Source of the DNA: Heterodontus francisci
Lineage: Eukaryota
Assembly: GCF_036365525.1 (NCBI RefSeq)
Contig: NC_090380.1
Span: 72,715,757-72,779,756, forward strand
Reading direction: 5' to 3'
Length of the DNA stretch: 64,000 nucleotides
In this document: positions 17,701 through 63,856 of the stretch, one piece after another
Position numbering within the stretch: position 1 is the first letter of the stretch
How the letters are laid out: each line of letters opens with the position of its first letter
Made by a program: the position numbers and the translations under genes
The notes under the pieces: generated by a model
Database searches by the model: none
What the model saw: the letters and a program-made list of their open reading frames with translations, nothing else
Told to the model about the DNA's origin: nothing

Positions 17701-17734
17701 ATGATGATTGCTACATTGCTCTTGTTTTCAGTCT
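17701..17734 (+). CDS. Leader (signal peptide) exon of the VJ receptor
   Basis: aagcATGATG encodes hydrophobic MMIATLLLFSV and ends at a consensus donor T|GTAAGT in phase 1. A 136-nt intron separates it from the V exon. Confidence 0.85.
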
Positions 17735-20700
17735 GTAAGTATATCGATTCTATATATAAGTAGTATATAAAATTAATCAGATTTTGATACCGACAGGTTT
17801 AATATAACTTGACACTATGTTAAGACATTTTAAATATCTTTATAACTTTAATGAGGTTGTATTGTAATAGGTGCTGCCACTAGATTAGAGCTGCAACAAT
17901 CTCCTCTCGCACTCTGGCTGCACGAAGGCCAGTCTGCCCATTTGGACTGCATTCTACAATCCGAGGGCAAGGTAGTAAATGGCAGTTTTTATTGGCATGT
18001 TCGTGAAGTGAAGTCTGGTGAAACGCCTGTGAGAAATATCAGTACCGAGCCAGAAGATGATCGTATCAATGTGTCCAGTAACAAAGCATCTGATTTCAAC
18101 AGCTCATTGATAATTAAAGACTTTCACATTACTGACACGGGTGTGTATTATTGCAACATCATTATTCACGAACATTTACTTTCGAGGACGATCAGAGGCG
18201 CTGGGACTCATCTGTTTATTCAAGGTAAGGGATGTTGCGGAACTGCGTATTGTTCGGGTTAGGCATTGGAATCGCCATTAAGGAGGCATATGTTGTAGGA
18301 CTGCAATTGCATGTACGAATGGTCGTGGGCTGCAGTGGGTATGAGCAGCCTCATCAGTGGTCCTTAAAGGGGTCATTAGAGGCTGCTTCAAAAACAGCTT
18401 GAAACAGTTTTTTCCACTTTTCAGCACTCCACTCAATATGTCCATCTATCCGGACATAACTTCACTAACAAATTCGTGTTTTCTTTTATACCCTTCAGCC
18501 ATAGTTTACTCGTTCCTAGAGTTCATTCCGAATCTCTACTGTTTTGAGTTTAACTAATAGCCTTTTATATGGTACTCCCAAGTAGGAAGAAAGATAGAAT
18601 CAAATATAAACAGATACGGAAACGATGAGCGCATTACCACCAGGGAAATGTATATAACGACCAAGACGAGTTACTACTTTTGGGAAGTTATTTTGAATGT
18701 AATCTGTAGTTGTGTATAAATGAGGTTATTACTTTTGAGAATGTCTACAACATGAAAAGATAATGGAACTACAACAGCAGAAAAGGACATTTGGGTGACA
18801 TTACCCATTCCTTTCAATGAAACGTATGCAATCACAGTCTCAGATCATGGAATCAGAGAATAGCTACATGTGACTAGTGGTGTTCCACTGGGATCAGTGC
18901 TGGGACCTTTGCTGTTTGTAGTATATATAAATGATTTGGAGGAAAATGTAGCTGGTGTGATTAGTAAGTTTGCGGACGACACAAAGGTTGGTGTTGTTGC
19001 GGATAATGATGAGGATCGTCAGAGGATACAGCAGGATATAGATCGGTTGGAGACTTGGGTGGAGAAATGGCAGATGGAGTTTAATCCGGACAAATGTGAG
19101 GTAATGCATATTGGAAGGTCTAATGCAGGTGGGAGGTATACAGTAAATGGCAGAACCCTTAGGAGTATTGACAGGCAGAGAGATCTGGGCGTACAGGTCC
19201 ACAGGTCACTGAAAGTGGCAACGCAGGTGGATAAGGTAATCAAGAAGGCATTCGGCATGCTTGCCTTCATCGGTCGGGGCATAGAATATAAAAATTGGCA
19301 AGTCATGTTGCAGTTGTACAGAACCTTAGTTAGGCCACACTTAGAATATTGCATGCAATTCTGGTCGCCACACTACCAGAAGGACGTGGAGGCTTTGGAG
19401 AGGGTACAGAGGAGGTTTACCAGGATGGTGCCTGGTCTGGAGGGCATTAGCTATGAGGAGAGGTTGGAAAAACTCGGATTGTTTTCACTGGAACGACGGA
19501 GGTGGAGGGGCGACATGATAGAGGTTTACAGAGTTATGAGCGGCATGGACAGAGTGGATAGTAGAAGCTTTTTCCCAGGGTGGAAGAGTCAGTTACTAGG
19601 GGACATAGTTTTAAGGTGCGAGGGGCAAAGTTTAGAGGGGATGTGCGAGGCAGGTTTTTTTTACACAGAGGGTGGTGAGTGCCTGGAACTTGCTGCCAGG
19701 GGAGGTGGTGGAAGCAGATACGATAGCGACGTTTAAGAGACATCTTGACAAATATATGAATAGGAAGGGAATAGAGGGATATGGGCCCCGGAAGTGCAGA
19801 AGGTGTTAGTTTCAGCAGGCATCAAGATTGGCGCAGGCTTGGAGGGCCGAATGGCCTGTTCCTGTGCTGCACTGTTCTTTGTTCTTTGATACAATTCTAA
19901 AGGGGGTGCAGGAACACAGAGGCCTGGGGACATATGTACACAAATTGTTGAAGGTGGCAGGGCAGGTTGAGGAAGTAGTTGAAAAAGGCATACGGGAGCC
20001 ACACCATGTGGATTTCCTCTGAAAAGAGAAGTTGGTTCTTTGAAAAAAAGAATTCTTTGAGGAACTGGCAGGCCAGTACATTTCCCAAATCATTGCACTG
20101 AGGTCCAGCAGAGACCTATTTTTGCCATTCCTGTAAAATCGATACTTTGGTCTTATGCTGACCATCTGTTGAATAGATAAATTGCTTTTTTAGATGAAAC
20201 ATTAATAGGTCATGCTTTTCAGTATGTATTTATTTATTTGTGGTTACCGCAGCAATGGAATTGAAATCCTGCCTTTTATCAAAATGATCAAATATTTACG
20301 GCTGAAAGTTTGTTTTTGAATAATTCACTTTCTAAAGTCTTTTTTTTTACAGATGTTGATCACAAGTATGATTCAATTAAAAGTAGGTGCATTATATTTT
20401 TATTTTTCATTTCCCCATTGGAATTAACTCTTTAAGGTTAATCATAACTAATGTGGTAGATGGAAATTTCAGAAGTGAGAATGAGCAGGAATATTAGAGA
20501 TAGGAAGGGACAAGAAGAACTTGAAGATTTGGAAAGCAACGATGATAAAATTGTCAACAAATCCCTTTGGAATAATTTTTTTGTTTACTAAGTGAGCTAT
20601 TACTCCTTTAAAAATAATGTAGAACAATCTGTATTATTGTGATAGACCTATAATTCCTTCCCAATTCACACAGAGCAAGTTACTGGAACCTGGACCAATT

Positions 20701-20879
20701 ACAGATTGTCCTTCTTCTCTAGTTTGCTCCAAATTATTACACCTACAGAATTACATTTGATCCAATACGATTATATTGCAGATTGCAGGACCATTCTGAA
20801 TAATCTCCTGTCAGTCATCCGCTATATTTTGTTTCTTCTGCTCATGTGTTACTTCATACTCGTTGAGAAATTCTACTAA
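17701..20879 (+). CDS. Spliced gene join(17701..17734,17871..18224,20353..20382,20782..20879): 171-aa single VJ-type Ig-domain, Arg-transmembrane receptor, NKp30/NCR3-like
   Basis: All three introns are GT-AG and phase 1, and the frame stays open from ATG 17701 to TAA 20877-20879 (34+354+30+98=516 nt). Protein: MMIATLLLFSVC AATRLELQQSPLALWLHEGQSAHLDCILQSEGKVVNGSFYWHVREVKSGETPVRNISTEPEDDRINVSSNKASDFNSSLIIKDFHITDTGVYYCNIIIHEHLLSRTIRGAGTHLFIQ DVDHKYDSIK NCRTILNNLLSVIRYILFLLLMCYFILVEKFY*. The family call is from motif resemblance only. Confidence 0.8.
17871..18224 (+). CDS. Ig V-set exon with intrinsic J-like G strand (VJ-type, non-rearranging)
   Basis: Acceptor taatag|, donor CAAG|GTAAGG, 354 nt, phase 1-1. 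Motifs: QQSP in strand A, B-strand Cys (LDC), C-strand Trp (GSFYW), DTGVYYC, diglycine bulge GAGTHLFI, four N-glycosylation sequons (NGS, NIS, NVS, NSS). No CACAGTG heptamer after YYC. Confidence 0.93.
18869..20000 (+). mobile_element. CR1 LINE fragments in intron 2 of the VJ receptor gene
   Basis: GVPLGSVLGPLLF, KFADDTK, RPHLEYCMQFWSP and 3' UTR, followed by a second short CR1 piece. Confidence 0.92.
20353..20382 (+). CDS. 30-nt stalk micro-exon of the VJ receptor (DVDHKYDSIK)
   Basis: Strong acceptor tcttttttttttacag|, donor AA|GTAGGT, symmetric phase 1-1, frame open. Confidence 0.7.
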
Positions 20880-20892
20880 ATGTGAAACAAAG
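20782..20892 (+). CDS. Transmembrane/stop exon of the VJ receptor (Cys in stalk, Arg in TM, EKFY tail)
   Basis: Acceptor attgcag| in phase 1 gives NCRTILNNLLSVIRYILFLLLMCYFILVEKFY*. The Arg codon CGC is at 20820-20822 and the stop at 20877-20879. A strong donor AAG|GTATGT at 20892/20893 implies a further non-coding 3' exon, which I could not locate. Confidence 0.8.
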
Positions 20893-25848: not shown

Positions 25849-28800
25849 AGCTGTCAGTCTTCACTGCAGGATTGTCCAGCTGTCAGTCTGCACTGCAGTA
25901 TTGTCCAGCTGTCAGCCTTCACTGAAGTATTGTCCAACTGTTAGTCTTCACTGCAGTATTGTCCAGCTGTCAGTCTGCACTGCAGGATTGTCCAGCTGTC
26001 AGTCTGCACTGCAGTATTGTTCAGCTGTCAGTCTTCACTGAAGTATTGTCCAGCTGTCAGTCTTCACTGCAGTATTGTCCAGCTGTCAGTCTGCACTGCA
26101 GGATTGCCCAGCTGTCAGTCTGCACTGCAGTATTGTCCAGCTGTCAGTCTGCACTGCAGGATTGTCCGGCTGTCAGTCTTCACTGCAGTATTGTCCAGCT
26201 GTCAGTCTGCACTGCAGGATTGTCCAGCTGTCAGTCTGCACTGCAGTATTGTCCGGCTGTCAGTCTTCACTGCAGTATTGTCCGGCTGTCAGTCTTCACT
26301 GCAGTATTGTCCAGCTGTCAGTCTGCACTGCAGGATTGTCCAGCTGCCAGTCTGCACTGCAGTATTGTCCGGCTGTCAGTCTGCACTGCAGTATTGTCCG
26401 GCTGTCAGTCTGCACTGCAGTATTGTCCGGCTGTCAGTCTGCACTGCAGGATTGTCCAGCTGCCAGTCTGCACTGCAGTATTGTCCGGCTGTCAGTCTGC
26501 ACTGCAGTATTGTCCGGCTGTCAGTCTTCACTGCAGTATTGTCCGGCTGTCAGTCTGCACTGCAGGATTGTCCGGCTGTCAGTCTGCACTGCAGTATTGT
26601 CCAGCTGTCAGTCTTCACTGCAGTATTGTCCAGCTGTCAGTCTTCACTGCAGTATTGTCCGGCTGTCAGTCTTCACTGCAGTATTGTCCAGCTGTCAGTC
26701 TTCACTGCAGTATTGTCCAGCTGTCAGTCTTCACTGCAGTATTGTCCGGCTGTCAGTCTTCACTGCAGTATTGTCCAGCTGTCAGTCTTCACTGCAGTAT
26801 TGTCCGGCTGTCAGTCTTCACTGCAGTATTGTCCAGCTGTCAGTCTTCACTGCAGTATTGTCCAGCTGTCAGTCTGCACTGCAGTATTGTCCAGCTGTCA
26901 GTCTTCACTGCAGTATTGTCCAGCTGTCAGTCTTCACTGCAGTATTGTCCGGCTGTCAGTCTGCACTGCAGGATTGTCCAGCTGTCAGTCTGCACTGCAG
27001 TATTGTCCAGCTGTCAGTCTTCACTGCAGTATTGTCCAGCTGTCAGTCTTCACTGCAGTATTGTCCGGCTGTCAGTCTGCACTGCAGGATTGTCCGGCTG
27101 TCAGTCTGCACTGCAGGATTGTCCGGCTGTCAGTCTTCACTGCAGTATTGTCTGGCTGTCAGTCTTCACTGCAGTATTGTCCAGCTGTCAGTCTGCACTG
27201 CAGGATTGTCCAGCTGTCAGTCTGCACTGCAGTATTGTCCGGCTGTCAGTCTGCACTGCAGTATTGTCCAGCTGTCAGTCTTCACTGCAGTATTGTCCGG
27301 CTGTCAGTCTGCACTGCAGGATTGTCCGGCTGTCAGTCTGCACTGCAGGATTGTCCGGCTGTCAGTCTTCACTGCAGTATTGTCTGGCTGTCAGTCTTCA
27401 CTGCAGTATTGTCCAGCTGTCAGTCTGCACTGCAGGATTGTCCAGCTGTCAGTCTGCACTGCAGTATTGTCCAGCTGTCAGTCTTCACTGCAGTATTGTC
27501 CAGCTGTCAGTCTGCACTGCAGTATTGTCCAGCTGTCAGTCTTCACTGCAGTATTGTCCAGCTGTCAGTCTTCACTGCAGTATTGTCCGGCTGTCAGTCT
27601 GCACTGCAGGATTGTCCAGCTGTCAGTCTGCACTGCAGTATTGTCCAGCTGTCAGTCTTCACTGCAGTATTGTCCAGCTGTCAGTCTTCACTGCAGTATT
27701 GTCCGGCTGTCAGTCTGCACTGCAGGATTGTCCGGCTGTCAGTCTGCACTGCAGGATTGTCCGGCTGTCAGTCTTCACTGCAGTATTGTCTGGCTGTCAG
27801 TCTTCACTGCAGTATTGTCCAGCTGTCAGTCTGCACTGCAGGATTGTCCAGCTGTCAGTCTGCACTGCAGTATTGTCCGGCTGTCAGTCTTCACTGCAGT
27901 ATTGTCCAGCTGTCAGTCTGCACTGCAGGATTGTCCAGCTGTCAGTCTGCACTGCAGGATTGTCGAGCTGCCAGTCTGCACTGCAGTATTGTCCGGCTGT
28001 CAGTCTGCACTGCAGTATTGTCCGGCTGTCAGTCTTCACTGCAGTATTGTCCAGCTGTCAGTCTGCACTGCAGGATTGTCCAGCTGTCAGTCTGCACTGC
28101 AGTATTGTCCGGCTGTCAGTCTTCACTGCAGTATTGTCCAGCTGTCAGTCTGCACTGCAGTATTGTCCGGCTGTCAGTCTTCACTGCAGTATTGTCCGGC
28201 TGTCAGTCTGCACTGCAGAATTGTTCAGCTGACAGTCTGCACTGCAGTATTGTTCAGCTGCCAGTCTTCACTGCAGTATTGTTCAGCTGACAGTCTGCAC
28301 TGCAGTATTGTTCAGCTGCCAGTCTTCACTGCTGTATTGTTCAGCTGTCAGTGTTCACTGCAGTATTGTCCGGCTGTCAGTCTGCACTGCAGTATTGTTC
28401 AGCTGACAGTCTGCACTGCAGTATTGTCCGGCTGTCAGTCTGCACTGCAGTATTGTTCAGCTGACAGTCTGCACTGCAGTATTGTCCGGCTGTCAGTCTG
28501 CACTGCAGTATTGTCCGGCTGTCAGTCTGCACTGCAGTATTGTTCGGCTGACAGTCTGCACTGCAGTACTGTTCAGCTGCCAGTCTTCACTGCTGTATTG
28601 TTCAGCTGCCAGTCTTCACTGCAGTATTGTTCAGCTGCCAGTCTTCACTGCTGTATTGTTCAGCTGCCAGTCTTCACTGCAGTATTGTTCAGCTGCCAGT
28701 CTTCACTGCTGTATTGTTCAGCTGCCAGTCTTCACTGCAGTATTGTTCAGCTGCCAGTCTTCACTGCTGTATTGTTCAGCTGTCAGTCTGCACTGCAGAA

Positions 28801-31800
28801 TTGTTCAGCTGACAGTCTGCACTGCAGTATTGTTCAGCTGCCAGTCTTCACTGCAGTATTGTTCAGCTGCCAGTCTTCACTGCTGTATTGTTCAGCTGTC
28901 AGTGTTCACTGCAGTATTGTCCGGCTGTCAGTCTGCACTGCAGTATTGTTCAGCTGACAGTCTGCACTGCAGTATTGTCCGGCTGTCAGTCTGCACTGCA
29001 GTATTGTTCAGCTGACAGTCTGCACTGCAGTATTGTCCGGCTGTCAGTCTGCACTGCAGTATTGTCCGGCTGTCAGTCTGCACTGCAGTATTGTCCGGCT
29101 GTCAGTCTGCACTGCAGTATTGTTCGGCTGACAGTCTGCACTGCAGTATTGTTCAGCTGCCAGTCTTCACTGCAGTATTGTTCAGCTGTCAATCTTCGCT
29201 GCAGTATTGTTCAGCTGCCAGTCTTCACTGCTGTATTGTTCAGCTGTCAGTCTGCACTGCAGTATTGTTCAGCTGTCAGTCTGCACTGCAGTATTGTTCA
29301 GCTGACAGTCTTCACATGCTGTATTGTTCAGCTGCCAGTCTGCACTGCAGTATTGTCCAGCTGTCAGTGTTCACTGCAGTATTGTCCAGCTGTCAGTCTG
29401 CACTGCAGTATTGTTCAGCTGTCAGTCTTCACTGCAGTATTGTCCAGCTGTCAGTGTTCACTGCTGTATTGTTCAGCTGCCAGTCTTCACTGCAGTATTG
29501 TTCAGCTGCCAGTCTTCAATGCTGTATTGTTCAGCTGCCAGTCTTCACTGCTGTATTGTTCAGCTGCCAGTCTTCACTGCTGTATTGTTCAGCTGCCAGT
29601 CTTCACTGCAGTATTGTTCAGCTGCCAGTCTTCACTGCTGTATTGTTCAGCTGCCAGTCTTCACTGCAGTATTGTTCAGCTGTCAATCTTCACTGCAGGA
29701 TTGTCCAGCTGTCAGTCTGCACTGCAGTATTGTTCAGCTGTCAGTCTGCACTGCAGTATTGTTCAGCTGTCAATCTTCACTGCAGTATTGTCCAGCTGTC
29801 AGTGTTCACTGCAGTATTGTCCAGCTGTCAGTCTGCACTGCAGTATTGTTCAGCTGTCAGTCTTTACTGCAGTATTGTTCAGCTGCCATTCTGCACTGCA
29901 GTATTGTCCAGCTGTCAGTGTTCACTGCAGTATTGTCCAGCTGTCAGTCTGCACTGCAGTATTGTTCAGCTGTCAGTCTTTACTGCAGTATTGTCCAGCT
30001 GTCAGTCTTCACTGCAGTATTGTTCAGCTGCCAGTCTTCACTGCAGTATTGTTCAGCTGCCAGTCTTCACTGCAGTATTGTTCAGCTGCCAGTCTTCACT
30101 GCAGTATTGTTCAGCTGCCAGTCTTCACTGCAGTATTGTTCAGCTGTCAATCTTCACTGCAGGATTGTCCAGCTGTCAGTCTGCACTGCAGTATTGTTCA
30201 GCTGTCAGTCTGCACTGCAGTATTGTTCAGCTGTCAATCTTCACTGCAGTATTGTCCAGCTGTCAGTGTTCACTGCAGTATTGTCCAGCTGTCAGTCTGC
30301 ACTGCAGTATTGTTCAGCTGTCAGTCTTTACTGCAGTATTGTTCAGCTGCCATTCTGCACTGCAGTATTGTCCAGCTGTCAGTGTTCACTGCAGTATTGT
30401 CCAGCTGTCAGTCTGCACTGCAGTATTGTTCAGCTGTCAGTCTTTACTGCAGTATTGTCCAGCTGTCAGTCTTTACTGCAGTATTGTCCAGCTGTCAGTG
30501 TTCACTGCTGTATTGTTCAGCTGCCAGTCTTCACTGCTGTATTGTTCAGCTGCCAGTCTTCACTGCTGTATTGTTCAGCTGCCAGTCTTCACTGCAGTAT
30601 TGTTCAGCTGCCAGTCTTCACTGCAGTATTGTTCAGCTGCCAGTCTTCACTGCTGTATTGTTCAGCTGCCATTCTGCACTGCAGTATTGTCCAGCTGTCA
30701 GTGTTCACTGCAGTATTGTCCAGCTGTCAGTCTGCACTGCAGTATTGTTCAGCTGTCAGTCTTTACTGCAGTATTGTCCAGCTGTCAGTGTTCACTGCTG
30801 TATTGTTCAGCTGCCAGTCTTCACTGCTGTATTGTTCAGCTGCCAGTCTTCACTGCAGTATTGTTCAGCTGCCAGTCTTCACTGCTGTATTGTTCAGCTG
30901 CCAGTCTTCACTGCAGTATTGTTCAGCTGCCAGTCTTCACTGCAGTATTGTTCAGCTGTCAGTCTTCACTGCAGTATTGTTCAGCTGTCAATCTTCACTG
31001 CAGGATTGTCCAGCTGTCAGTCTGCACTGCAGGATTGTCCAGCTGTCAGTCTGCACTGCAGGATTGTCCAGCTGTCAGTCTGGCACTGCAGGATTGTCCA
31101 GCTGCGAGTCTGCACTGCAGGATTGTTCAGCTGTCAGTCTTCACTGCAGTATTGTTCAGCTGTCAGTCTTCACTGCAGTATTGTTCAGCTGCCAGTCTTC
31201 ACTGCAGTATTGTTCAGCTGCCAGTCTTCACTGCAGTATTGTTCAGCTGTCAGTCTGTACTGCAGTATGGAAGCAGCTGCCAGTCTGCACTGCAGTATGG
31301 AAGCAGCTGCCAGTCTTCACTGCAGTATTGTTCAGCTGTCAGTCTTTACTGCAGTATTGTTCAGCTGTCAGTCTGCACTGCAGTATTGTTCAGCTGCCAG
31401 TCTTCACTGCAGTATTGTTCAGCTGTCAGTGTTCACTGCTGTATTGTTCAGCTGCCAGTCTTCACTGCAGTATTGTTCAGCTGCCAGTCTTCACTGCAGT
31501 ATTGTTCAGCTGCCAGTCTTCACTGCAGTATTGTTCAGCTGTCAATCTTCACTGCTGTATTGTTCAGCTGTCAATCTTCACTGCTGTATTGTTCAGCTGT
31601 CAATCTTCACTGCTGTATTGTTCAGCTGTCAGTCTTCACTGCTGTATTGTTCAGCTGTCAATCTTCACTGCATTATTGTTCAGCTGTCAACCTTCACTGC
31701 TGTATTGTTCAGCTGTCAGTCTTCACTGCTGTATTGTTCAGCTGTCAATCTTCACTGCATTATTGTTCAGCTGTCAATCTTCACTGCTGTATTGTTCAGC

Positions 31801-33649
31801 TGTCAATCTTCACTGCTGTATTGTTCAGCTGTCAGTCTTCACTGCTGTATTGTTCAGCTGTCAGTCTTCACTGCTGTATTGTTCAGCTGTCAATCTTCAC
31901 TGCATTATTGTTCAGCTGTCAATCTTCACTGCTGTATTGTTCAGCTGTCAGTCTTCACTGCTGTATTGTTCAGCTGTCAATCTTCACTGCATTATTGTTC
32001 AGCTGTCAATCTTCACTGCTGTATTGTTCAGCTGTCAGTCTTCACTGCTGTATTGTTCAGCTGTCAATCTTCACTGCTGTATTGTTCAGCTGTCAATCTT
32101 CACTGCTGTATTGTTCAGCTGTCAATCTTCACTGCAGTATTGTTCAGCTGTCAGTCTTCACTGCAGTATTGTCCAGCTGTCAGTCTTCACTGCAGTATTG
32201 TTCAGCTGCCAGTCTTCACTGCAGTATTGTTCAGCTGCCAGTCTTCACTGCAGTATTGTTCAGATGCCAGTCTTCACTGCAGTATTGTTCAGCTGTCAGT
32301 CTGCACTGCAGTATTGTTCAGCTGTCAGTCTTCACTGCAGTATTGTTCAGCTACCAGTCTTCACTGCAGTATTGTTCAGCTGTCAGTCTGCACTGCTGTA
32401 TTGTTCAGCTGCCAGTCTTCACTGCAGTATTGTTCAGCTGCCAGTCTTCACTGCAGTATTGTTCAGCTGCCAGTCTTCACTGCTGTATTGTTCAGCTGTC
32501 AGTCTTCACTGCAGTATTGTTCAGCTGCCAGTCTTCACTGCAGTATTGTTCAGCTGCCAGTCTTCACTGCTGTATTGTTCAGCTGCCAGTCTGCACTGCA
32601 GTATTGTTCAGCTGCCAGTCTTCACTGCAGTATTGTTCAGATGCCAGTCTTCACTGCAGTATTGTTCAGCTGTCAGTCTGCACTGCAGTATTGTTCAGCT
32701 GTCAGTCTTCACTGCAGTATTGTTCAGCTGCCAGTCTTCACTGCAGTATTGTTCAGCTGTCAGTCTGCACTGCAGTATTGTTCAGCTGCCAGTCTTCACT
32801 GCAGTATTGTTCAGCTGCCAGTCTTCACTGCAGTATTGTTCAGATGCCAGTCTTCACTGCAGTATTGACCAGCCGTCAGTCTGCACTGCAGTATTGTTCA
32901 GGTGCCAGTCTTCACTGCAGTATTGTTCAGCTGCCAGTCTTCACTGCAGTATTGTTCAGATGCCAGTCTTCACTGCAGTATTGTTCAGCTGTCAGTCTGC
33001 ACTGCAGTATTGTTCAGCTGTCAGTCTTCACTGCAGTATTGTTCAGCTGCCAGTCTTCACTGCAGTATTGTTCAGCTGTCAGTCTGCACTGCAGTATTGT
33101 TCAGCTGCCAGTCTTCACTGCAGTATTGTTCAGCTGCCAGTCTTCACTGCAGTATTGTTCAGCTGCCAGTCTTCACTGCAGTATTGTTCAGATGCCAGTC
33201 TTCACTGCAGTATTGACCAGCCGTCAGTCTGCACTGCAGTATGGGCCAGCCTTCAGTCTGCACTGCCGTTAGGGCCAGCCGTCAGTCTGCACTGCAGTAT
33301 GGGCCAGCTGTCAGTCTGCACTGCAGTATGGGCCAGCCTTCAGTCTGCACTGCCGTTAGGTCCAGCTGTCAGTCTGCACTGCAGTATGGGCGAGCTGTCA
33401 GTCTGCACTGCAGTATGGGCCAGCCTTCAGTCTGCACTGCAGTATGGGCCAGCCGTCAGTCTGCACTGCCGTATGGGCCAGCCGTCAGTCTGCACTGCCG
33501 TATGGGCCAGCTGTCAGTCTGCACTGCAGTATGGGCCAGCCATCAGTCTGAACTGCAGTAATGGCCAGCCGTCAGTCTGCACTGCAGTAATGGCCAGCCG
33601 TCAGTCTGCACTGCAGTAATGGCCAGCCGTCAGTCTGCACTGCAGTATG
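25849..33649. repeat. 29-bp minisatellite array, ~269 units, consensus CAGCTGTCAGTCT(T/G)CACTGCAGTATTGT(C/T)
   Basis: Directly visible 29-nt periodicity over ~7.8 kb. Rare variants recur at exact multiples of 29, e.g. tctgg at 27151, 27383 and 27789. Confidence 0.98.
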
Positions 33650-34783
33650 GTAGCACCTATTGCTGCTCTGCCTTGGTCCTTTGCTGAGGAAGAAGAGGAG
33701 CAGCACCTGCAACACCACCACAGCATAAGCAGGAGCAACATCAGCAGAAGGAGCAGCGGCCTCTCCTGAGCTGCATTCTGCCACATGCAATGGATACAGA
33801 GCTCCAACTCAAAGGAGATGATACACCCAGGGTATACAGGCAGAGGATCAGCTTTCTGGACTTGACTGAGTACCAGTATCTCAGGAGGCTCAGAGCTTTG
33901 TGGCAGGTCATTGCTGACACCTGCAGCCTCCTGGACCATGACACTCTTCCAAGTGGGCGAGGTGGGAATTCATTGCCAGTGGCCATCAAGGTCACCACAG
34001 CCATGAATTTCTTTGCCTCTGGCTCCTGCTGGTGACATCTGCTGGATTTCACAACCTGCTGCGGACAAGTGCATATCCCAGGTGTTTACCATGTTTGCCA
34101 AGGCCGTCATTGTGTCCACTTCGCTAATGGTGAGGCCAGTCAGACCAAGAGGACTCTCAGATTTGCTATAATGCTGGATTCCCTCAGCTGCAGGGTGTCA
34201 TCGAGTGCATATATGTGGCAACCAAAGTGCCGTCAGATCATCTAGGAATCTTTCTCAATCAATAGGGATTCCACTCTATCAGTGTTCAGCTGGTATGTAA
34301 CCACGAGAAGGTTTTCATGCATGTCTGTGTAATATACCCTGAAAGCTGCCATGATGCCTTCATTCTGTACCAGTCACATCTCCCATGGGTCTTTCCAATG
34401 AGAGACAGCAGATGGCTAACTTTTAAGGATCTGGCTTATGACGTGTGTGCAACCCTATGTCTGATGAACAGGAAAGGTACAATCAGAGCCACTTGAGTAC
34501 AAGAGCAGTCATTGAACAAGACATTGTGTTGCTGAAGATGGGATTCAGATGCCAGAACAGATCTGGAGGCAGCCTTCAGTATGTACCAGCAGCAAGGGTC
34601 TCTGGAATGGGAGTAGTCTGCTGCGTCTTGCACAACATTGCACTGTGGAAAAATCTGGAGCTGCAGGAGGAGGAAGGTGATGATAGCTCTGTATCTTTAG
34701 AGGAGGAGAAGGAGCTTGATGTGGCCATGGTCTCTGCAACTGCCCACCTAGCTGCCAGGGATGTCTGCAATGGGCTCATATAG
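33647..34783 (+). pseudogene. Degenerate PIF/Harbinger (HARBI1-like) transposase
   Basis: Fragments PRVYRQRISFLDL, LPVAIKVTTAMNFFASGS, QGVIECIYVA (decayed GAIDCTH), GFHSISVQLVC, YPESCHDAFIL, ERYNQSHLSTRAVIEQ..LLKMGFRC, CCVLHNIA and an acidic tail. Contains frameshifts and stops. Confidence 0.88.
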
Positions 34784-46073: not shown

Positions 46074-47196
46074 AAATGAAACAACATTTCAACAAAAAGA
46101 AAGGAAAGCTCCTACAAAGGGGAACAGATTACAAGGAAATTTACCGGCAAGTAACAGAAGGGCAAAAGAAATTAATACAAAGTGAAGAGGAATTAGCACA
46201 GAAGGAGATACAGTCGACCAGTCTGACTCAAAGGCCTGGAGTTTCTGCTCGATTGTGCTTGTTTTATTCAGTGCATTTCACATGATAACAGCGTAACCAG
46301 TACAAAAGAGCACAGAATTATAAGCACAAATTTCATTCAATGCAAATCAAGTTCCTGCAGAATTTTGCATTAGTTTTAAAAACATTACACTAGAAGCAGG
46401 CTCTGCTCACAAAACTGGCCACATTCCCAGGGTGAATTAATCACTATTGTGAGTTTCCATTAATTGTGCTCATTTGCAGGCCTTCGAGAAGGCTCCAAAG
46501 ATTAAGCTGTATATTTTGAATGTAAGGACACTAATGGGTACAAATTGCAAGGTTTTGAATAAAAAAAAGTTATACTAAGGAACTGAGTAATGTACCCCAA
46601 ACTACTGACACTGATTTGGAATGTTTTTATTGTGTTAAACCCATTTTCATCTATGTTAATCAAACTTTGCCGAGTTACCGCTCTTAAATATATAAAGCAA
46701 TACTTCATAAAGCAAAATGTAAAATATTTTTGCATATTTTGTATTCAGTGATATGCAAATGAGTTTCAGCAGAAACTTGGGTTGGGGGGGCGGGCGGGGG
46801 GGTGGCTGGTTAACCCTTTTCAAAATGGGCGCAATTTTAGGTGCAATTTTGTGCCCAAAGCGGAAACTCTACCACAAAGACTTAAAAGAGAAAGGTCGGT
46901 GCTCAGTGATAAGTGTGTGGCAGAATCAAAGCACTTATTACAAATTTGGGCATAAACTGCTCATGATTTTCTGCCTGTTAATGTTCGTGAGTAGAAAATT
47001 ATGGATAACTTGGGCTCAGATTTGCAATGGGCACTTCTGCCTGCCAAGCTTTACTGTCAGGTTCTAAAGAGAAATCTGTCCCTCTGTGTGCCACTTTGAC
47101 CTAAAGACTTACTGAAAAAGATAGTGTGCCAAAGTGTTTCAAAGAATTAATCACAAAGAGGCAGAATGTTAGTATTTTAAATGACAGTTCCAAGTA

Positions 47197-49462
47197 TTTG
47201 GCCCTGTGAAGTATTTGGCCCTGTGGGACTGGGTCGGCCCGGACCTGCTGGAAGTATACGAGAGTATGCTCCTGGCCGGCAGCATGTCAGAATCCATGAG
47301 AAAAGGCATCATCACCCTCATCTACAAGCGCAAGGGGGAGAGGGCAGAAATCAGAAATTGGCAGCCCATCTCACTGCTTAATGTTGACTACAAGATTCTG
47401 TCCAAAGTCATAGCCAGTCGAGTCAAGTCTGCTCTGGAGTTGGTGATCCACCCCGATCAGACCTGCACTGTACCCGGCAGGAAGATCTCCGATAGCCTCG
47501 CGCTACTTAAGGATACGATCGCCTATGTACGGGGCAGGAGGGTGGACACCTGCCTCAGGAGAAGGCTTTTGACAGGATATCGCACACCTACATGATGGAT
47601 GTGCTTTCCAAAATGGGGTTTGGGGAGGGAATCTGCAATTGGACCAAACTGCTCTACGCAAACATCAGTAGTGCAGTCTCAATCAATGGGTGGGAATCGG
47701 AAAGTTTCCTGGTCCAATCTGGAGTCAGACAGGGCTGACCTCTCTCCCCGGTCTTGTTTGTTTGCTATATTGAACCCTTTGCTGAGTCTATTAAGAAGGA
47801 TGCGAGCATCAGAGGGGTGACAATCCCAGGCAGCGGAGGCACTCAGGTTAAAACCTCCCTGTACATGAATGACGTCGCCGTCTTCTGCTCGGATCCGCTG
47901 TCTGTGCGCAGACTGATGAGCATCTGCGACCAGTTCAAACTGGCCTCGGGAGCCAAAGTTAACCACGGCAAGAGCGAGGTCATGTTCTTTGGGAACTGGG
48001 CCGACCGATCCTTTGTCCCCTTCACCGACAGGTCAGACTACCTGAAGGTGCTGGGGATATGGTTTGCAAGGGCCAGGGCGTGCAACAAAACCTGGAAGGA
48101 GTGAGTAGCCAAGGTACAACACAAGCTGAGCATGTGGGGGCAGCGATCTCTCTCCATTGTGGGTAAGAACCTGGTCATCAGGTGCGAGGCGCTCACGTTG
48201 TTGCTGTATGTGGCGCAGGTCTGGCCCATACCCCACTCCTGCGCTGTGGCGGTCACCCAAGCCAATTTCCGCTTCATCTGGGGATCTAAAATGGACCGGG
48301 TCCGGAGGGACATGATGTTCAAACCTCTAGATAAGGGCAGCAAAAATGTACCCAACGTGGCCCTCATCCTGATGACTACCTTCGTGTGTGGCTGCATCAA
48401 GCTGTGTGTAGACCTCCAGTACGCAAACTCCAAGTGTCACTACGTGCTGAGGTTCTATCTGTCACCGGTGTTGCGAAGGATGGGCCTGGTCACATTGCCG
48501 CGGAACGCTCCATCCAGTTGGACTCTGCCGTACCACCTATCCTTCGTGGAGCAGTTTCTGCGGAAAAACACCTTTGACCACCAATCCATCAGGCAGTGGT
48601 CTACACGGAATGTCCTCAAGGCCCTACAGGAAAAGGAGATGGTGGATCCTGTCTGCTGGCTCCCTGAGCAGACTGCCAAAGTCATTTGGCGGAATGCCTC
48701 ATCACCAGAACTTTCAAACAAGCTCCAAGATGTAGTTTGGCTGGTGGTGAGAAGCGCCCTCCCCGTCAGATCCTTCCTGCATGCCCGAAGTCTCACCCCC
48801 TCCGCACAATGCCCTCAAGGTGGCTGTGGTGGGGAAGAGATGGTTGCCCACCTCCTTCTGGAATGTGTCTTTGCAAAGCAGGTGTGGAAAGAGATGCAGT
48901 GGTTTTTGTCAAGGTTCATTCCAAGCAGCTCTGTAACACAGGAGTCTGTGCTCTACGGGCTGTTCCCAGGGATGCACACCGAGATAAACATCAACTGCTG
49001 CTGGAGGACTATCAATTTGGTGAAAGACGCCCTTTGGTCTGCCCGAAACTTGCTGGTCTTCCAGCGCAAAGAGTTGTTCACGACCGAATGTTGCAGACTG
49101 GCATATTCCAAGGTCCAGGCTATGTGCTGAGGGACGCACTAAAGCTTGGGGCAGCCGCAGCAAAGACTCAATGGGGAAAGACCACTGTGTAAGGTCCCCC
49201 CACCAAGCTGAACTGAGGGGTTGGATCCATGGGAAACCCCTCGAACTGTATCGGGAAAATTTTGTGTGCTGTAAAATGTAAAAATGTATATGGCACGAGA
49301 AATGAAATGGAAGGGTTGTGAGGCAACTCATGATTGTATTGAAGGAAACTGATCACCTTTGCACTGTTTGTAATTTTTGACTTGGTGCTGTTAGAAACTG
49401 TTTGGTAATGTATTTTTTTTACAGATTTTTATGAATAAAGTATATTTTGGAAATAAAAAAAA
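47197..49462 (+). mobile_element. 5'-truncated Tx1-clade LINE with poly(A) tail
   Basis: NWQPISLLNVDYKIL, GVRQG, LYMNDV, zinc-finger CPQGGC...H...C, AATAAA and poly(A). 11-bp TSD AGTTCCAAGTA at 47186-47196 and 49463-49473. Confidence 0.93.
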
Positions 49463-54488: not shown

Positions 54489-54509
54489 TTTCAGTTTCGT
54501 TTCTCTTTC
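54489..54509. promoter_or_regulatory. Candidate ISRE/IRF element TTTCAGTTTCGTTTCTCTTTC (identical copy at 52662-52682)
   Basis: Four TTTC half-sites with spacers of 2, 1 and 2 nt, including AGTTTCGTTTCT, which matches the ISRE consensus. Confidence 0.45.
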
Positions 54510-56450: not shown

Positions 56451-57749
56451 GACCTCTATCAGGTCACCACATCCCTCAATCCTTTCTCTAGAGAAGAGTC
56501 CTGTACAACCTTTCCTGATGGTCAGAATGTTGGGGGAGGGGCCAGTCAGTGTGTGTGTGAGAGGTGGTGGTGAGGGAGTCACAGGTACGTATGAGGCATA
56601 GGGGAGGGTCAGGTCAGCGCAGGACTGGTTCTGTCAAAAGGACACAAGATTCTTTGGGATTATCACAGAAAAAGGATACCTGGGAATGCAATGTTAAGGA
56701 ACCATTAATGGGGGGGGGGGATCTTGGGAAATCTCACCATTTCCCACGGAGCCATTTCTCCCCTCTTTGTATTTTCTCACACCAGGAAGCATTATAGTGA
56801 ATGTGCACAGTACCCTTTCTACTGCCTCAACATCATACCATTAGTTTGGAGCTCAAAACTGCACAATACTCCAACTGTGGTCTGATTAAGGTTTTGTAGA
56901 GATTCACCATTAAACCCTGATTTCTATATGCCTGTAACTATTGATATAAAGTGAAACTGAACCACAAATCCACATCACCCAGTTTTCCCTAATTCAATGT
57001 AATGATTACTTTTCTTTCTGAAAATGCAGCACTTCATATTTGGTGACACTGAATTCTTCTTTGCCCATTGCACCATCTTTTCAATATTTTTCTGTAGCTT
57101 CCTCCTATTTTAATATTTCCTGTAAATATAGACACCACTTCCTCCAGTCCTATATCCAAACACTTGATGTTCACAAGTGAACAGAAGCAGTTACAGAACT
57201 GAACTCTGGGATATCATTACCACATCCAACCATTTGGAAACTGCCTTTAACTCTTACTCTGTTTTCTCCTTCTAACCAGTCATTAATTCTTTTTCAGGAT
57301 GCTGTCACAGTGCTTTCTGGTACTTTTTTGGCTGTTTAGTCATGTTGGTAAGTTCTTTTTCTTCCTCCACTGGATTTTTGAAAACTATTAATATGAGAAT
57401 TCAATGCACATGAATAAACTTAAGTGAAGGTTAAATGCAAATATGAATGTGACCGATATTAGGTACATCTAAGGGCAAATCATGTTTAACTAATGAGTTT
57501 TTTGATGAACTAACAGAGAGATTTCTGGGAGGGAGGGGAATGGGTGAGGTCAGAAGTGCGGAAATGGGTAGGACACAGTTGAGGGCCCCTGTCAACCACA
57601 GTTGGGGGGGGGATTCCTCAGTTGAGGAGAAAGGAAGACATATCAGAAGCGCTGTTGTGGAAGGTTGCATCATCAGAACAGATGCATTGGAGATGGAGAA
57701 ACTGGGAGAATGGAATCCTTACAGGAAGCAGGGTGTGAGGAAGTGTAGT

Positions 57750-58022: not shown

Positions 58023-58039
58023 AATCAATAATGTGAAAT

Positions 58040-60203
58040 GCACTTTTGAACTACAAGAAAGCCCCCAGCGATTTAACATCCGCAGCACTTAAAGCAGCCA
58101 GAAGTACTGCACAAAGAACAGCTAGGCGTTGCGCAAACGACTACTGGCAACACCTATGCAGTCATATTCAGCTGGCCTCAGACACCGGAAACATCAGAGG
58201 AATGTATGATGGCATGAAGAGAGCTCTTGGGCCAACCATCAAGAAGATCACCCCCCTCAAATCTAAATCGGGGGACATAATCACTGACCAACGCAAACAG
58301 ATGGACCGCTGGGTTGAGCACTACCTAGAACTGTACTCCAGGGAGAATGCTGTCACTGAGACTGCCCTCAATGCAGCCCAGCCTCTACCAGTCATGGATG
58401 AGCTGGACATACAGCCAACCAAATCGGAACTCAGTGATGCCATTGATTCTCTAGCCAGCGGAAAAGCCCCTGGGAAGGACAGCATTACCCCTGAAATAAT
58501 CAAGAGTGCCAAGCCTGCTATACTCTCAGCACTACATGAACTGCTATGCCTGTGCTGGGACGAGGGAGCAGTACCCCAGGACATGCGCGATGCCAACATC
58601 ATCACCCTCTATAAAAACAAAGGTGACCGCGGTGACTGCAACAACTACCGTGGAATCTCCCTGCTCAGCATAGTGGGGAAAGTCTTTGCTCGAGTCGCTC
58701 TGAACAGGCTCCAGAAGCTGGCCGAGCGCGTCTACCCTGAGGCACAGTGTGGCTTTCGTGCAGAGAGATCGACTATTGACATGCTGTTCTCCCTTCGTCA
58801 GATACAGGAGAAATGCCGTGAACAACAGATGCCCCTCTACATTGCTTTCATTGATCTCACCAAAGCCTTTGACCTCGTCAGCAGACGTGGTCTCTTCAGA
58901 CTACTAGAAAAGATCGGATGTCCACCAAAGCTACTAAGTATCATCACCTCATTCCATGACAATATGAAAGGCACAATTCAACATGGTGGCTCCTCATCAG
59001 AGCCCTTTCCTATCCTGAGTGGTGTGAAACAGGGCTGTGTTCTCGCACCCACACTTTTTGGGATTTTCTTCTCCCTGCTGCTTTCACATGCGTTCAAATC
59101 CTCTGAAGAAGGAATTTTCCTCCACACAAGATCAGGGGGCAGGTTGTTCAACCTTGCCCGTCTAAGAGCGAAGTCCAAAGTACGGAAAGTCCTCATCAGA
59201 GAACTCCTCTTTGCTGACGATGCTGCTTTAACATCTCACACTGAAGAATGCCTGCAGAGTCTCATCGACAGGTTTGCGTCTGCCTGCAATGAATTTGGCC
59301 TAACCATCAGCCTCAAGAAAACGAACATCATGGGGCAGGATGTCAGAAATGCTCCATCCATCAATATTGGCGACCACGCTCTGGAAGTGGTTCAAGAGTT
59401 CACCTACCTAGGCTCAACTATCACCAGTAACCTGTCTCTAGATGCAGAAATCAACAAGCGCATGGGTAAGGCTTCCACTGCTATGTCCAGACTGGCCAAG
59501 AGAGTGTGGGAAAATGGCGCACTGACACGGAACACAAAAGTCCGAGTGTATCAGGCCTGTGTCCTCAGTACCTTGCTCTATGGCAGCGAGGCCTGGACAA
59601 CGTATGCCAGCCAAGAGCGACGTCTCAATTCATTCCATCTTCGCTGCCTTCGGAGAATACTTGGCATCAGGTGGCAGGACTATATCTCCAACACAGAAGT
59701 CCTTGAAGCGGCCAACACCCCCAGCTTATACACACTACTGAGTCAGCGGCGCTTGAGATGGCTTGGCCATGTGAGCCGCATGGAAGATGGCAGGATCCCC
59801 AAAGACACATTGTACAGCGAGCTCGCCACTGGTATCAGACCCACCGGCCGTCCATGTCTCCGTTATAAAGACGTCTGCAAACGCGACATGAAATCGTGTG
59901 ACATTGATCACAAGTCGTGGGAGTCAGTTGCCAGCATTCGCCAGAGCTGGCGGGCAGCCATAAAGACAGGGCTAAATTGTGGCGAGTCGAAGAGACTTAG
60001 TAGTTGGCAGGAAAAAAGACAGAGGCGCAAGGGGAGAGCCAACTGTGCAACAGCCCCAACAAACAAATTTCTCTGCAGCACCTGTGGAAGAGCCTGTCAC
60101 TCCAGAATTGGCCTTTATAGCCACTCCAGGCACTGCTTCACAAACCACTGACCACCTCCAGGCGCGTATCCATTGTCTCTCGAGATAAGGAGGCCCAAAG
60201 AAT
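58040..60203 (+). mobile_element. Young RTE-clade LINE, 5'-truncated, with an uninterrupted 701-codon RT + C-terminal frame (58046-60151)
   Basis: KAPGKD, NYRGISLL, QCGFR, FIDLTKAFD, GVKQG, LFADD, YLGS and CSTC..H finger, with no stops. It lacks the N-terminal AP endonuclease and a true ATG. Confidence 0.96.
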
Positions 60204-62234: not shown

Positions 62235-63517
62235 TCTGTGATTTACACTGATAATAGTGATGATGTTGTGGAGTGGTCGCACTGCCGCCCATAGCTGGCT
62301 TTTGAATGCCTAGACTGGTTTTAGATCGGACTCCGTCTAAATGTCTCCAGCGAGCTGCAAGCATTAAATATTTGGTCAGAGTTTAAAAATTTCAGTGGCT
62401 TCATGTCGAGCTGTTTATTCTTTCACTTAGTTTATTTTCAAGGCTGTTGTCAGCATAAGGCTGAATTAAACTAAAGCCTTAATAGAAACCTAGAAAACAT
62501 TTTGAATGTAAAATAACTTTTTTTAAATTACACTTATTTTGTTTCTGATTTTGTTCATGAATCTTAAAAAAAGTCACTGATCAGTGTAGACCTGCATCCC
62601 ATTGTTGCTTGAACCCAATGTCAGAGGGTTAGGACGTGGTTTATGACTTTGTACAGCGAGGGGAAACTGCAAAGTGGAGGCTAGTTGTTTCCCCTCACGG
62701 AAGTATCCACTCAGTGCATGTATTTATTATCCAACAGTCAAATTCAGATGAAAAGTTATGGGGGAAAAATGCAATCCACAAAGGATACAAAGTGAGAGGA
62801 GGTCAAATTGAAACTGACACCAATGCCACTTTTTGTTATTGTTTATTACAAATTGGAATATAAGGGAACTGGATGGGTAGCCATGGAATTGGAGCAGCGG
62901 ACTTACCCACTCTGTTCCCGCACTCTGGCCCTCTGCAATTTTAAATGGCAAGTGGCAAGGACAACTGCTCAAAGCCAGTAGTTTCTAAATATGCAAATTG
63001 GGCTCTGATGTCAACAGGGCTCCAGCTGCTATTTTTTACCTGAGGCCTGAAAGAGGAGGTAGTGGTGGCTTCCCCACCAAGCTAAACCCACCAGGAACAG
63101 GAACAAGGGTCAGATAAGACCTGTCCTGTGAATTGTTTTTCAAGTGGACTTTTATGTCTTACTGAAAATCTCTAATTGTAAACTCAAATGAAACATTGGG
63201 GTGTTACAGCTCTAAAAACAAGTTAATAGACATGAAGATATTGGAAATTCACAGTTGGCTCAGATTTTTATCAAAAATATATTCAGGCACTTACCAGCAG
63301 TTTATATAGGCTGGGAAATTCTCACCACTCATCCTGCTCTGATGCTGTAACTTCACAAGCGGAAACAGCTGGAAGGAATTTCCTGGCCATAATCTATCCA
63401 TTTTATGGGCATAAAAATGTGCCTTTTTAATAGGAAAACTGACCTGAACATAAGTTAATATATAAATATTTGTTGAAGGTTTTGTTTGTAACTGCATTAT
63501 TTTCATTCCTTATTCAG

Positions 63518-63856
63518 AGACAGTCACTGTTTCTACTGATCAGCATACTGGTGCGGAGATTGGCAAACATGTCATCCTCAAGTGTACTTTTGATCAGATT
63601 GACAATAACCCGACAGTGATGTGGGAGAAGGTAGGTGTGAAACAAACCGTGCACCAATACAAGGGAAACGTTGATGACTTCAGTGAACAGCACGGCAACT
63701 ACACCAAGAGAACTGAAATTGATGGAAGCACAATCAAAAAAGGAGATGCATCTCTTACACTGAAGAATGTTAATATCTGGGATGAAGGAATTTACAAGTG
63801 CAGTGTCAGTAATGATCATGGATTCGGAGAAGCATTCATGAATCTGTCTGTTTGGG
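63518..63856 (+). CDS. IgV exon of a B7-family gene, most similar in motif to B7-H4/VTCN1; partial, gene continues beyond the window
   Basis: Acceptor tttcattccttattcag|, donor TGG G|GTATGT, 339 nt, phase 1-1. Translation: TVTVSTDQHTGAEIGKHVILKCTFDQIDNNPTVMWEKVGVKQTVHQYKGNVDDFSEQHGNYTKRTEIDGSTIKKGDASLTLKNVNIWDEGIYKCSVSNDHGFGEAFMNLSVW. B7/butyrophilin hallmarks: IG..xILxCTF, VH.Y..G.D...EQ...Y..RT, GDASLxLKNV, DEGxYxC. The ORF track catches only 63616 onward. Confidence 0.88.

What the first reader, a model, noticed from the sequence alone, without database searches (positions are those of the whole stretch)
17701..63856. NKp30-like receptor and B7-family gene as immediate neighbours: candidate linked receptor-ligand pair
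Seen: the only two host coding loci I can find are the VJ/Arg-TM receptor and a B7-type IgV exon, on the same strand and ~43 kb apart, separated by transposons and a minisatellite. Established: VJ-like single-V receptors (NKp30, CD28/CTLA4, TMIGD2) bind B7-family ligands (B7-H6, CD80/86, HHLA2). In mammals these pairs are unlinked, and the B7-H4 receptor is not firmly established. Inference: this may be a physically linked, co-inherited receptor-ligand module or a relic of an ancestral immune gene complex, and the receptor is a candidate partner for a B7-H4-like ligand.
Basis: inference. Interest (0 to 1): 0.8.

Follow-up and report, generated by a model that had tools for sequence, protein, structure and literature searches.

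The report
Shark VJ receptor beside B7-H4 gene
In the horn shark, an expressed gene missing from the protein collection I searched, which encodes a small T-cell-receptor-like activating receptor, lies about 36 kb upstream of the shark version of the immune checkpoint gene B7-H4 (VTCN1). Both genes are real, but nothing yet shows that the two proteins bind each other.

Summary
The window has exactly two Ig V-type exons, both on the + strand.

**Receptor gene (17701-20892).** It has four coding exons. Spliced RNA contigs from two runs match it with no mismatches and use GT..AG junctions at 17734/17871, 18224/20353 and 20382/20782. It encodes about 171 aa:
- a signal peptide;
- a germline-joined VJ domain (YYC...GAGTHLFI);
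- a short stalk with one Cys;
- a membrane segment containing Arg;
- a 4-residue tail.

**B7 gene.** The exon at 63518-63856 is the IgV exon of RefSeq XP_067896839.1, named VTCN1 (B7-H4) of Heterodontus francisci. Its leader exon is at 57298-57347. Nine cartilaginous-fish relatives are 47-64% identical.

**Between the genes** I found only retroelement and Harbinger debris and a 7.8-kb minisatellite.

**Interpretation: partly supported.** The linkage and the B7-H4 identity stand. "NKp30-like" holds for architecture only, because the best solved relatives are TCR-alpha V-J chains. All shark VTCN1 models lack a membrane anchor.

The scan flagged similar B7-plus-receptor neighbours on other DNA of this genome (s1-872188, s1-873608) and just downstream of this window (s1-874363).

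The parts
17671..17734 (+). Receptor exon 1: about 30 nt of 5' UTR (the contig reaches 17671), ATG at 17701, signal peptide MMIATLLLFSV, phase-1 donor
   Evidence: Sequence. Junction 17734>17871 GT..AG in spliced contigs of runs X1 and X2, with a 64-nt side.
17871..18224 (+). Receptor exon 2: a single-exon germline-joined VJ Ig domain (codons 17873-18223). It has the canonical Cys/Trp/YYC residues, four N-x-S/T sites and the J-like motif GAGTHLFI.
   Evidence: Pfam V-set 2.5e-11. Best PDB hits are TCR-alpha V-J at E 5e-7, with the J strands aligned. Contigs cover it with 0 mismatches.
18864..19733 (+). Reverse-transcriptase fragment of a retroelement inside receptor intron 2
   Evidence: Pfam RVT_1 5.2e-13. 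Very high multi-copy read depth.
20353..20382 (+). Receptor exon 3: 30-nt stalk (D-VDHKYDSIK-N with the split codons)
   Evidence: Junctions 18224>20353 and 20382>20782, both GT..AG, in X1, X2 and X5.
20782..20892 (+). Receptor exon 4: membrane-proximal Cys, membrane segment LLSVIRYILFLLLMCYFILV with Arg, tail EKFY, stop at 20877-20879, then a GT donor at 20893 leading to further 3' UTR outside the laid stretch
   Evidence: Sequence. Contig pieces cover 20782-20892 with 0 mismatches, and the X1 contig has 231 nt more.
25849..33648 (.). Minisatellite, 29-bp unit, about 269 copies
   Evidence: Tandem Repeats Finder score 11581, 93% matches.
34266..34780 (+). Harbinger/PIF-type DDE transposase fragments
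   Evidence: Pfam DDE_Tnp_4 6e-07 and 8.6e-04.
36831..40065 (+). LINE remnants (endonuclease and reverse-transcriptase tail ORFs)
   Evidence: Exo_endo_phos_2 2e-13. RT-tail ORFs.
47185..49127 (+). LINE remnant (RT and zf-RVT)
   Evidence: zf-RVT 1.1e-09. RVT_1 members.
57298..57347 (+). VTCN1 leader exon (MLSQCFLVLFWLFSHV; ATG at 57299; phase-1 donor). The RefSeq model adds an upstream exon ending in AT.
   Evidence: Exact match to residues 2-17 of XP_067896839.1.
58037..60148 (+). Long LINE ORF2 (704 aa open) inside VTCN1 intron 1
   Evidence: RVT_1 3.5e-33.
63518..63856 (+). VTCN1 (B7-H4) IgV exon, phase 1 at both ends. The gene continues beyond the window end.
   Evidence: 100% identical to residues 19-130 of XP_067896839.1. 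Human VTCN1 IgV 3.6e-15 and CD276 7e-15.

Best explanation
There are two separate, genuine immunoglobulin-superfamily genes lying head to tail.

**Upstream gene.** It makes a small type I membrane protein of about 171 aa. It has one antigen-receptor-like VJ domain that never needs rearrangement, a stalk cysteine, an arginine in the outer third of the membrane segment, and no signalling tail. By analogy with NKp30, NKp46 and TCR-alpha, it most likely signals by pairing the arginine with the aspartate of an ITAM adaptor (CD3-zeta or FcR-gamma type). That makes it an activating receptor of lymphoid or NK-like cells. Its ligand is unknown.

**Downstream gene.** It is the shark B7-H4 (VTCN1) gene. 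As annotated in ten cartilaginous fishes, it encodes a V-C ectodomain with a conserved hydrophilic C-terminus and no membrane anchor, so it is probably secreted.

**Why they are neighbours.** The most likely reason is that both belong to an Ig-superfamily-rich region, not that they form a proven binding pair.

**Shown:** both genes, the splicing, the domain types and the adjacency. **Inferred:** adaptor coupling, secretion, and any interaction between the two proteins.
For: - **Receptor transcription.** Spliced contigs match at 100% and have three GT..AG junctions. There is no depth in the non-repeat intron bins. Relatives differ from the V exon by about 2.5% (X5: 9 of 353 bases, the same last two junctions) and about 12% (X8: 27 of 217 bases, the second junction shared and a variant third one), all.
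- **Receptor domain.** V-set domain and TCR-alpha V-J best hits, with the J motif aligned.
- **Receptor anchor.** Arg-bearing membrane segment and a 4-aa tail, read directly from the sequence. The role of such an Arg in NKp30 and NKp46 is described in PMC6514059.
- **B7 identity.** The B7 exon is XP_067896839.1, VTCN1. Relatives of 237-244 aa exist in eight named sharks or rays plus one unnamed assembly.
- **B7 C-terminus.** It is conserved (..FTDGxTMIRxDDGxxSxDL) with no hydrophobic stretch.
- **B7 fold.** AF2 model pLDDT 79.8. Foldseek TM-score 0.75-0.85 to BTN3A1, BTN2A1 and PD-L1 ectodomains.
- **Not a local duplication.** The two V domains share only generic IgV similarity, 27% over 33 aa.
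Against: - Adjacency of a VJ receptor and a B7 gene recurs in this genome according to unchecked scan notes (s1-874363, s1-872188, s1-873608). That could mean such modules are selected rather than accidental.
- Known VJ or V-type receptors do bind B7/butyrophilin V-C ligands: NKp30 with B7-H6, and gamma-delta TCR with BTN2A1.
- I could not see the wider neighbourhood, so the claim of an "Ig-superfamily-rich region" rests on knowledge of the human 1p13 VTCN1 region (CD2, CD58, CD101, IGSF3), not on this genome.
Confidence: 0.6

Rival explanations
1. Genuine co-inherited receptor-ligand module: the VJ receptor binds the neighbouring shark B7-H4, and linkage keeps matched alleles together, as in the KLR-CLEC2 pairs of the NK gene complex.
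For: - The genes are immediate neighbours on one strand with no host gene between them.
- Receptors of this architecture bind B7-family ligands. The B7-H4 receptor is still unidentified (PMC13212089).
- Genetically linked receptor-ligand pairs are an established principle (PMC3972465).
- A scan note (s1-874363, unchecked) places a second, ITIM-bearing V receptor just beyond the same B7 gene.
Against: - There are no binding, co-evolution or synteny data.
- The receptor V domain is nearest to TCR-alpha V-J, not to any known B7 receptor.
- It lacks the CD28-family CDR3 and tail motifs (versus the sequence).
- The annotated ligand has no membrane anchor.
- Ig-superfamily genes cluster for reasons of descent alone.
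Confidence: 0.17
2. The receptor is the activating half of a paired activating/inhibitory receptor set that flanks VTCN1. The reported ITIM receptor lies downstream. Both would recognise some other ligand, self or pathogen, and VTCN1 would merely sit between them.
For: The Arg-bearing membrane segment and tailless design are typical of activating members of paired receptor families (PMC6514059). Scan note s1-874363 reports an ITIM receptor beyond the window end.
Against: I could not read the downstream gene, so I do not know whether its V domain resembles this one. The word search found no close paralogue of 65-206 aa.
Confidence: 0.13
3. The receptor is a true member of the shark NCR3 (NKp30) family displaced from the MHC, and its ligand is a B7-H6-like protein encoded elsewhere.
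For: It has the same overall design as NKp30: one V(J) domain, Arg in the membrane segment and no signalling tail (PMC6514059). Sharks are reported to have several divergent NCR3 genes (accessions cited in PMC12227049).
Against: No NKp30 chain appears among the best 60 solved-structure hits, whereas TCR-alpha chains score down to E 5e-7. Published trees place NCR3 further from Ig/TCR V domains than other germline VJ genes (PMC12227049). Its neighbour is VTCN1, which is not an MHC gene in humans.
Confidence: 0.08
4. One of the two loci is not functional: a decaying receptor gene or a pseudo-exon.
For: The receptor is absent from the protein collection in its expected length range. The region is swamped by transposons.
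Against: All frames are intact and all splice sites canonical. Spliced transcripts occur in three organisms. The B7 exon belongs to a RefSeq protein conserved in ten cartilaginous fishes.
Confidence: 0.02

Closest known systems
NKp30 (NCR3) and its ligand B7-H6
   Same: One Ig V(J)-type ectodomain, a short stalk, Arg in the membrane segment, a tail without signalling motifs, and a B7-family V-C protein as known partner.
   Different: No detectable specific sequence kinship: TCR-alpha V-J is closer. The neighbour is VTCN1, not an MHC class III gene. The nearby B7 is B7-H4-like rather than B7-H6-like. NKp30 and B7-H6 are unlinked in mammals.
VTCN1 / B7-H4 (human, PDB 4GOS) and CD276 / B7-H3
   Same: IgV-IgC ectodomain. 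Human VTCN1 IgV is the best solved match to the window's V exon. RefSeq names the shark gene VTCN1. The receptor of B7-H4 is unknown.
   Different: All ten cartilaginous-fish proteins end in a conserved hydrophilic peptide, with no hydrophobic anchor like that of human B7-H4. Over the V-C unit, B7-H3 scores similarly.
Genetically linked NK receptor-ligand pairs (Nkrp1-Clr, NKp65-KACL, NKp80-AICL in the NK gene complex; CD2-CD58 on human 1p13)
   Same: Receptor and candidate ligand genes lie side by side, which would allow co-inheritance.
   Different: Those pairs have demonstrated binding, and the NK-complex pairs are C-type lectin-like. Here only the adjacency is shown.
Germline-joined VJ genes of sharks and fishes (UrIg/UrIg2, NITRs)
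   Same: A non-rearranging single-exon VJ domain with a J-like GxGTxL motif. Activating NITRs also carry a charged membrane residue and a short tail.
   Different: There is no C1 domain, unlike UrIg. NITRs are described from ray-finned fishes only. Kinship was not tested because no sequences of these families were obtainable here.
Butyrophilin BTN2A1/BTN3A1 recognised by the Vgamma9Vdelta2 TCR
   Same: A B7-like V-C ectodomain (the best structural matches of the shark VTCN1 model) is engaged by germline-encoded parts of a TCR V domain. The shark receptor's V domain is TCR-like.
   Different: That TCR is a rearranged heterodimer with C domains. No interaction is shown here.

Membership tests
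NKp30 / NCR3 | Single extracellular Ig V(J) domain encoded without rearrangement | tested here: met
   One exon, 17871-18224, carries V and a J-like GAGTHLFI motif.
NKp30 / NCR3 | Arg in the membrane segment and a cytoplasmic tail without signalling motifs | tested here: met
   LLSVIRYILFLLLMCYFILV followed by EKFY and a stop. Feature as defined in PMC6514059.
NKp30 / NCR3 | Specific sequence relationship to NKp30 | tested here: not met
   The PDB search lists 939 hits at E<=1. The best 60 (E 5e-7 to 3e-5) are TCR-alpha chains plus one MXRA8 chimera, and no NKp30 chain is among them.
NKp30 / NCR3 | Location in or linked to the MHC | tested here: inconclusive
   The only visible neighbour is VTCN1, which is on 1p13 in humans.
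B7 family, VTCN1/B7-H4 | Signal peptide, IgV and IgC ectodomain of B7/butyrophilin type | tested here: met
   P0004 sequence. AF2 pLDDT 79.8. Foldseek TM-score 0.75-0.85 to BTN3A1, BTN2A1 and PD-L1.
B7 family, VTCN1/B7-H4 | Closest human relative is VTCN1 | tested here: met
   Single V exon: VTCN1 3.6e-15 and CD276 7e-15. With the profile, VTCN1 IgV alone scores 80.8 bits against 84-87 bits for a whole CD276 V-C unit.
B7 family, VTCN1/B7-H4 | Membrane anchorage (C-terminal hydrophobic segment) | tested here: not met
   All ten cartilaginous-fish proteins end ..TMIRxDDGxxSxDL with no hydrophobic stretch. Longer isoforms cannot be excluded.
B7 family, VTCN1/B7-H4 | Conserved synteny with the VTCN1 neighbourhood (MAN1A2, TRIM45, TTF2) | not testable with these tools
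CD28 family (CD28, CTLA4, ICOS, CD28H, CD28HL1-3, CD28X, PD-1) | Proline-containing CDR3 motif (PPP or EIP type) and conserved tyrosine motif in the tail | tested here: not met
   The CDR3 is YYCNIIIHEHLLSRTIRGAG, without Pro. The tail is only EKFY. Motifs as listed in PMC11599192. None of that family's synteny groups includes VTCN1.
Genetically linked receptor-ligand pair | Physical adjacency of the two genes | tested here: met
   At most 36.4 kb, same strand, with only mobile elements and a minisatellite between.
Genetically linked receptor-ligand pair | Adjacency conserved across species | not testable with these tools
   Orthologues of VTCN1 exist in eight other named species, and the receptor is transcribed in two other organisms. 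Their loci could not be fetched.
Genetically linked receptor-ligand pair | Direct binding of the two ectodomains | not testable with these tools
   No complex prediction tool was available. The single-sequence AF2 model of the receptor V domain was unusable (pLDDT 37).

The most novel reading that the evidence does not exclude
Shark VTCN1 is flanked by an activating receptor (this gene) and an inhibitory V-type receptor, and both are its cognate receptors. That would reveal the long-sought B7-H4 receptor family as a TCR-like germline VJ receptor that mammals have lost or that has diverged beyond recognition. It would also reveal a co-inherited checkpoint module dating to the origin of jawed-vertebrate immunity.
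Probability: 0.13. Interest if true: 0.85.

Novelty: new member of a known kind. Interest (0 to 1): 0.5.

Why it matters
The receptor of B7-H4 is still unknown, although B7-H4 is a drug target. A 2026 review calls this a fundamental gap (PMC13212089). A physically linked candidate in a shark gives a cheap, concrete binding experiment.

Single-exon VJ genes are also sought as relics of the ancestor of antibodies and T-cell receptors (PMC12227049). This one is expressed, closest to TCR-alpha V-J, apparently unannotated, and sits beside a B7 gene.

If the two proteins do not bind, the finding reduces to one more shark Ig-superfamily receptor next to a known gene.

Tried and rejected
- **Word-index searches** with the receptor V exon and the B7 V exon found nothing. 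Their length limits (65-206 aa and 62-196 aa) exclude longer relatives, so this only shows that no protein of the expected size carries the receptor exon.
I could not read the rest of VTCN1, the reported ITIM receptor downstream, or any other species' locus.
- **Single-sequence AlphaFold** of the receptor V domain gave pLDDT 37, so I ran no fold search on it.
- **A PDB search** with the 31-aa membrane exon found nothing.
- **Ten non-shark hits** of the big search turned out to be multi-domain proteins named hemicentin-like, butyrophilin-like or HHLA2, or unnamed. They did not help with orthology.
- **A search of scan notes by sequence** was blank.
- **Papers not held:** Flajnik 2012 (PMC3709836) and Ohta and Flajnik 2015 (PMC4594805). 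Kinlein 2021 on shark NCR3 was not found. What I say about them is from memory and is marked as such.
- **Rejected readings:** CD28-family membership (motifs absent), recent duplication of one V exon into the other, and a pseudo-exon.


Full report
**What is in the window.** The 64-kb window is repeat-rich vertebrate DNA. The exact match of one exon to a RefSeq protein identifies it as horn shark, Heterodontus francisci. A six-frame screen for the V-domain signature finds only two Ig V-type exons, both on the + strand, at 17871-18224 and 63518-63856. Both pass Pfam V-set (E 2.5e-11 and 4.8e-12). I translated the other 188 open segments of 75 aa or more, leaving out the minisatellite, and scanned them against Pfam. 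The only families hit were RVT_1 (12 segments), DDE_Tnp_4, Exo_endo_phos, zf-RVT, zf-CCHC and Rho_N, which fit mobile elements. The minisatellite runs from 25849 to 33648 and has about 269 copies of a 29-bp unit.

**The receptor gene.**
- Exon 1 (ATG at 17701, ending at 17734) encodes MMIATLLLFSV and ends in phase 1.
- Exon 2 (17871-18224) encodes a complete V domain. It has the canonical Cys, Trp and YYC residues and four N-glycosylation sites. In the same exon there is a J-like strand, RGAGTHLFIQ.
- Exon 3 (20353-20382) is a 10-residue stalk.
- Exon 4 (20782-20892) encodes a membrane-proximal Cys, the segment LLSVIRYILFLLLMCYFILV, the tail EKFY and a stop at 20877-20879.

Contigs of two runs from one organism (X1, 790 nt; X2, 1004 nt) match with no mismatches. 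They join 17734 to 17871, 18224 to 20353 and 20382 to 20782, each across GT..AG. The non-repeat parts of the introns have essentially no depth, so these runs are RNA and the gene is transcribed and spliced as predicted. The contigs go on past a donor at 20892/20893, so there is more 3' UTR outside the stretch I laid.

A second organism (X5) has the last two of these junctions and 9 differences in 353 bases of the V exon. A third (X8) has 27 differences in 217 bases, the second junction, and a variant third junction in the stalk. The gene is therefore conserved and expressed beyond one species.

No protein of 65-206 aa in the 5.8-billion-protein collection carries this exon. It is probably unannotated. 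I did not search the joined model.

**What kind of receptor it is.** The best solved relatives are TCR-alpha V-J chains (E 5e-7). The J strands align: IRGAGTHLFI against IFGAGTRLTV. NKp30, CD28, CTLA-4 and PD-1 are not among the best 60 hits.

The CD28-family hallmarks are absent. These are a proline motif in CDR3 and a tyrosine motif in the tail (PMC11599192). None of that family's synteny groups involves VTCN1.

The architecture is that of NKp30 or NKp46: an Arg in the membrane segment that pairs with the Asp of CD3-zeta or FcR-gamma, and no signalling tail (PMC6514059). I therefore read it as an activating, adaptor-dependent receptor. That is inference from architecture. I regard NKp30 membership as not established. 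Published trees put NCR3 further from Ig/TCR V domains than other germline VJ genes (PMC12227049), which fits poorly with the TCR-like score here.

**The B7 gene.** The exhaustive HMMER search found a 241-aa protein that is 100% identical over the whole exon. [quoted passage not shown] Its leader exon lies in the window at 57298-57347, and RefSeq adds one more 5' exon. The genes are therefore at most 36.4 kb apart.

A 704-aa open LINE ORF2 sits in the 6.2-kb intron before the V exon.

Relatives of 237-244 aa and 47-64% identity occur in Scyliorhinus, Mustelus, Carcharodon, Heptranchias, Chiloscyllium, Stegostoma, Pristiophorus and Narcine, all named VTCN1 or VTCN1-like, plus one unnamed Logan contig.

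Human VTCN1 IgV is the best solved match to the V exon (3.6e-15), narrowly ahead of CD276. With a profile of the ten shark and ray proteins, the VTCN1 IgV alone scores 80.8 bits, against 84-87 bits for a whole CD276 V-C unit.

The AF2 model (pLDDT 79.8) superposes on BTN3A1, BTN2A1 and PD-L1 ectodomains at TM-score 0.75-0.85. The exon is therefore neither a pseudo-exon nor a stray butyrophilin fragment.

One unexpected point: all ten proteins end in a conserved hydrophilic peptide (..FTDGxTMIRxDDGxxSxDL) with no hydrophobic anchor. As annotated, shark B7-H4 looks secreted.

**The pairing hypothesis.** These points are established:
- The genes are adjacent.
- They lie on the same strand.
- Both are real genes.
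- The ligand-side gene is B7-H4-like.
- The two V domains are not recent copies of each other.

The B7-H4 receptor is still unidentified (PMC13212089). Linked receptor-ligand pairs are a known principle (PMC3972465).

These points are not established: binding, co-evolution, conserved adjacency, and any kinship of this receptor with a known B7 receptor.

Scan notes, which I could not check, report an ITIM-bearing V receptor just beyond the same B7 gene (s1-874363). They also report similar B7-plus-receptor neighbours on other pieces of this genome (s1-872188, s1-873608). That pattern either reflects real modules or simply the clustering of Ig-superfamily genes.

I put about 17% on true pairing and about 13% on a paired activating/inhibitory set with another ligand. 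About 60% goes to two neighbouring genes without a demonstrated functional link.

**Verdict.** The receptor is a new, expressed member of the germline VJ activating-receptor kind. The B7 gene is already in RefSeq. Interest is moderate. The hypothesis is cheap to test and touches an open question, but nothing beyond adjacency supports it so far.

Noticed in passing
beyond window; proteins P0004, P0151-P0159 (alignment A1): All ten cartilaginous-fish VTCN1/B7-H4 proteins are about 240 aa. They end in a conserved hydrophilic peptide (..FTDGxTMIRxDDGxxSxDL) and have no hydrophobic membrane anchor, unlike human B7-H4. In the AF2 model, residues 228-233 form an extra beta-strand after the IgC domain. 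Shark B7-H4 may be a secreted protein.
   Followed up: partly
window 20877-20893: The receptor's stop codon lies 13 nt before a used GT donor, so the mRNA has an intron in its 3' UTR. The X1 and X2 contigs carry 231 and about 466 further nucleotides that map outside 17600-21000.
   Followed up: no
window 58037-60148 (+): A 704-aa uninterrupted LINE ORF2 (RVT_1 E 3.5e-33) lies in the sense orientation inside VTCN1 intron 1. Near-identical C-terminal ORFs occur at 4727-5458 (-), 16086-16790 (-) and 61981-62382 (-), so the element family appears recently active.
   Followed up: no
window 25849-33648: A very regular 29-bp minisatellite (about 269 copies, 93% matches, no indels). All three + frames stay open for 750-1430 codons, an artefact of the repeat and not a gene.
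   Followed up: partly
window 57298-57301: The RefSeq VTCN1 start codon is split across an exon junction (..AT|G) and is followed directly by a second ATG at 57299. The in-exon ATG may be the real start.
   Followed up: no
window 18854-19993: The retroelement fragment in receptor intron 2 attracts RNA contig depth of tens of thousands in three organisms. This repeat family is heavily transcribed or very abundant in shark transcriptome assemblies.
   Followed up: no
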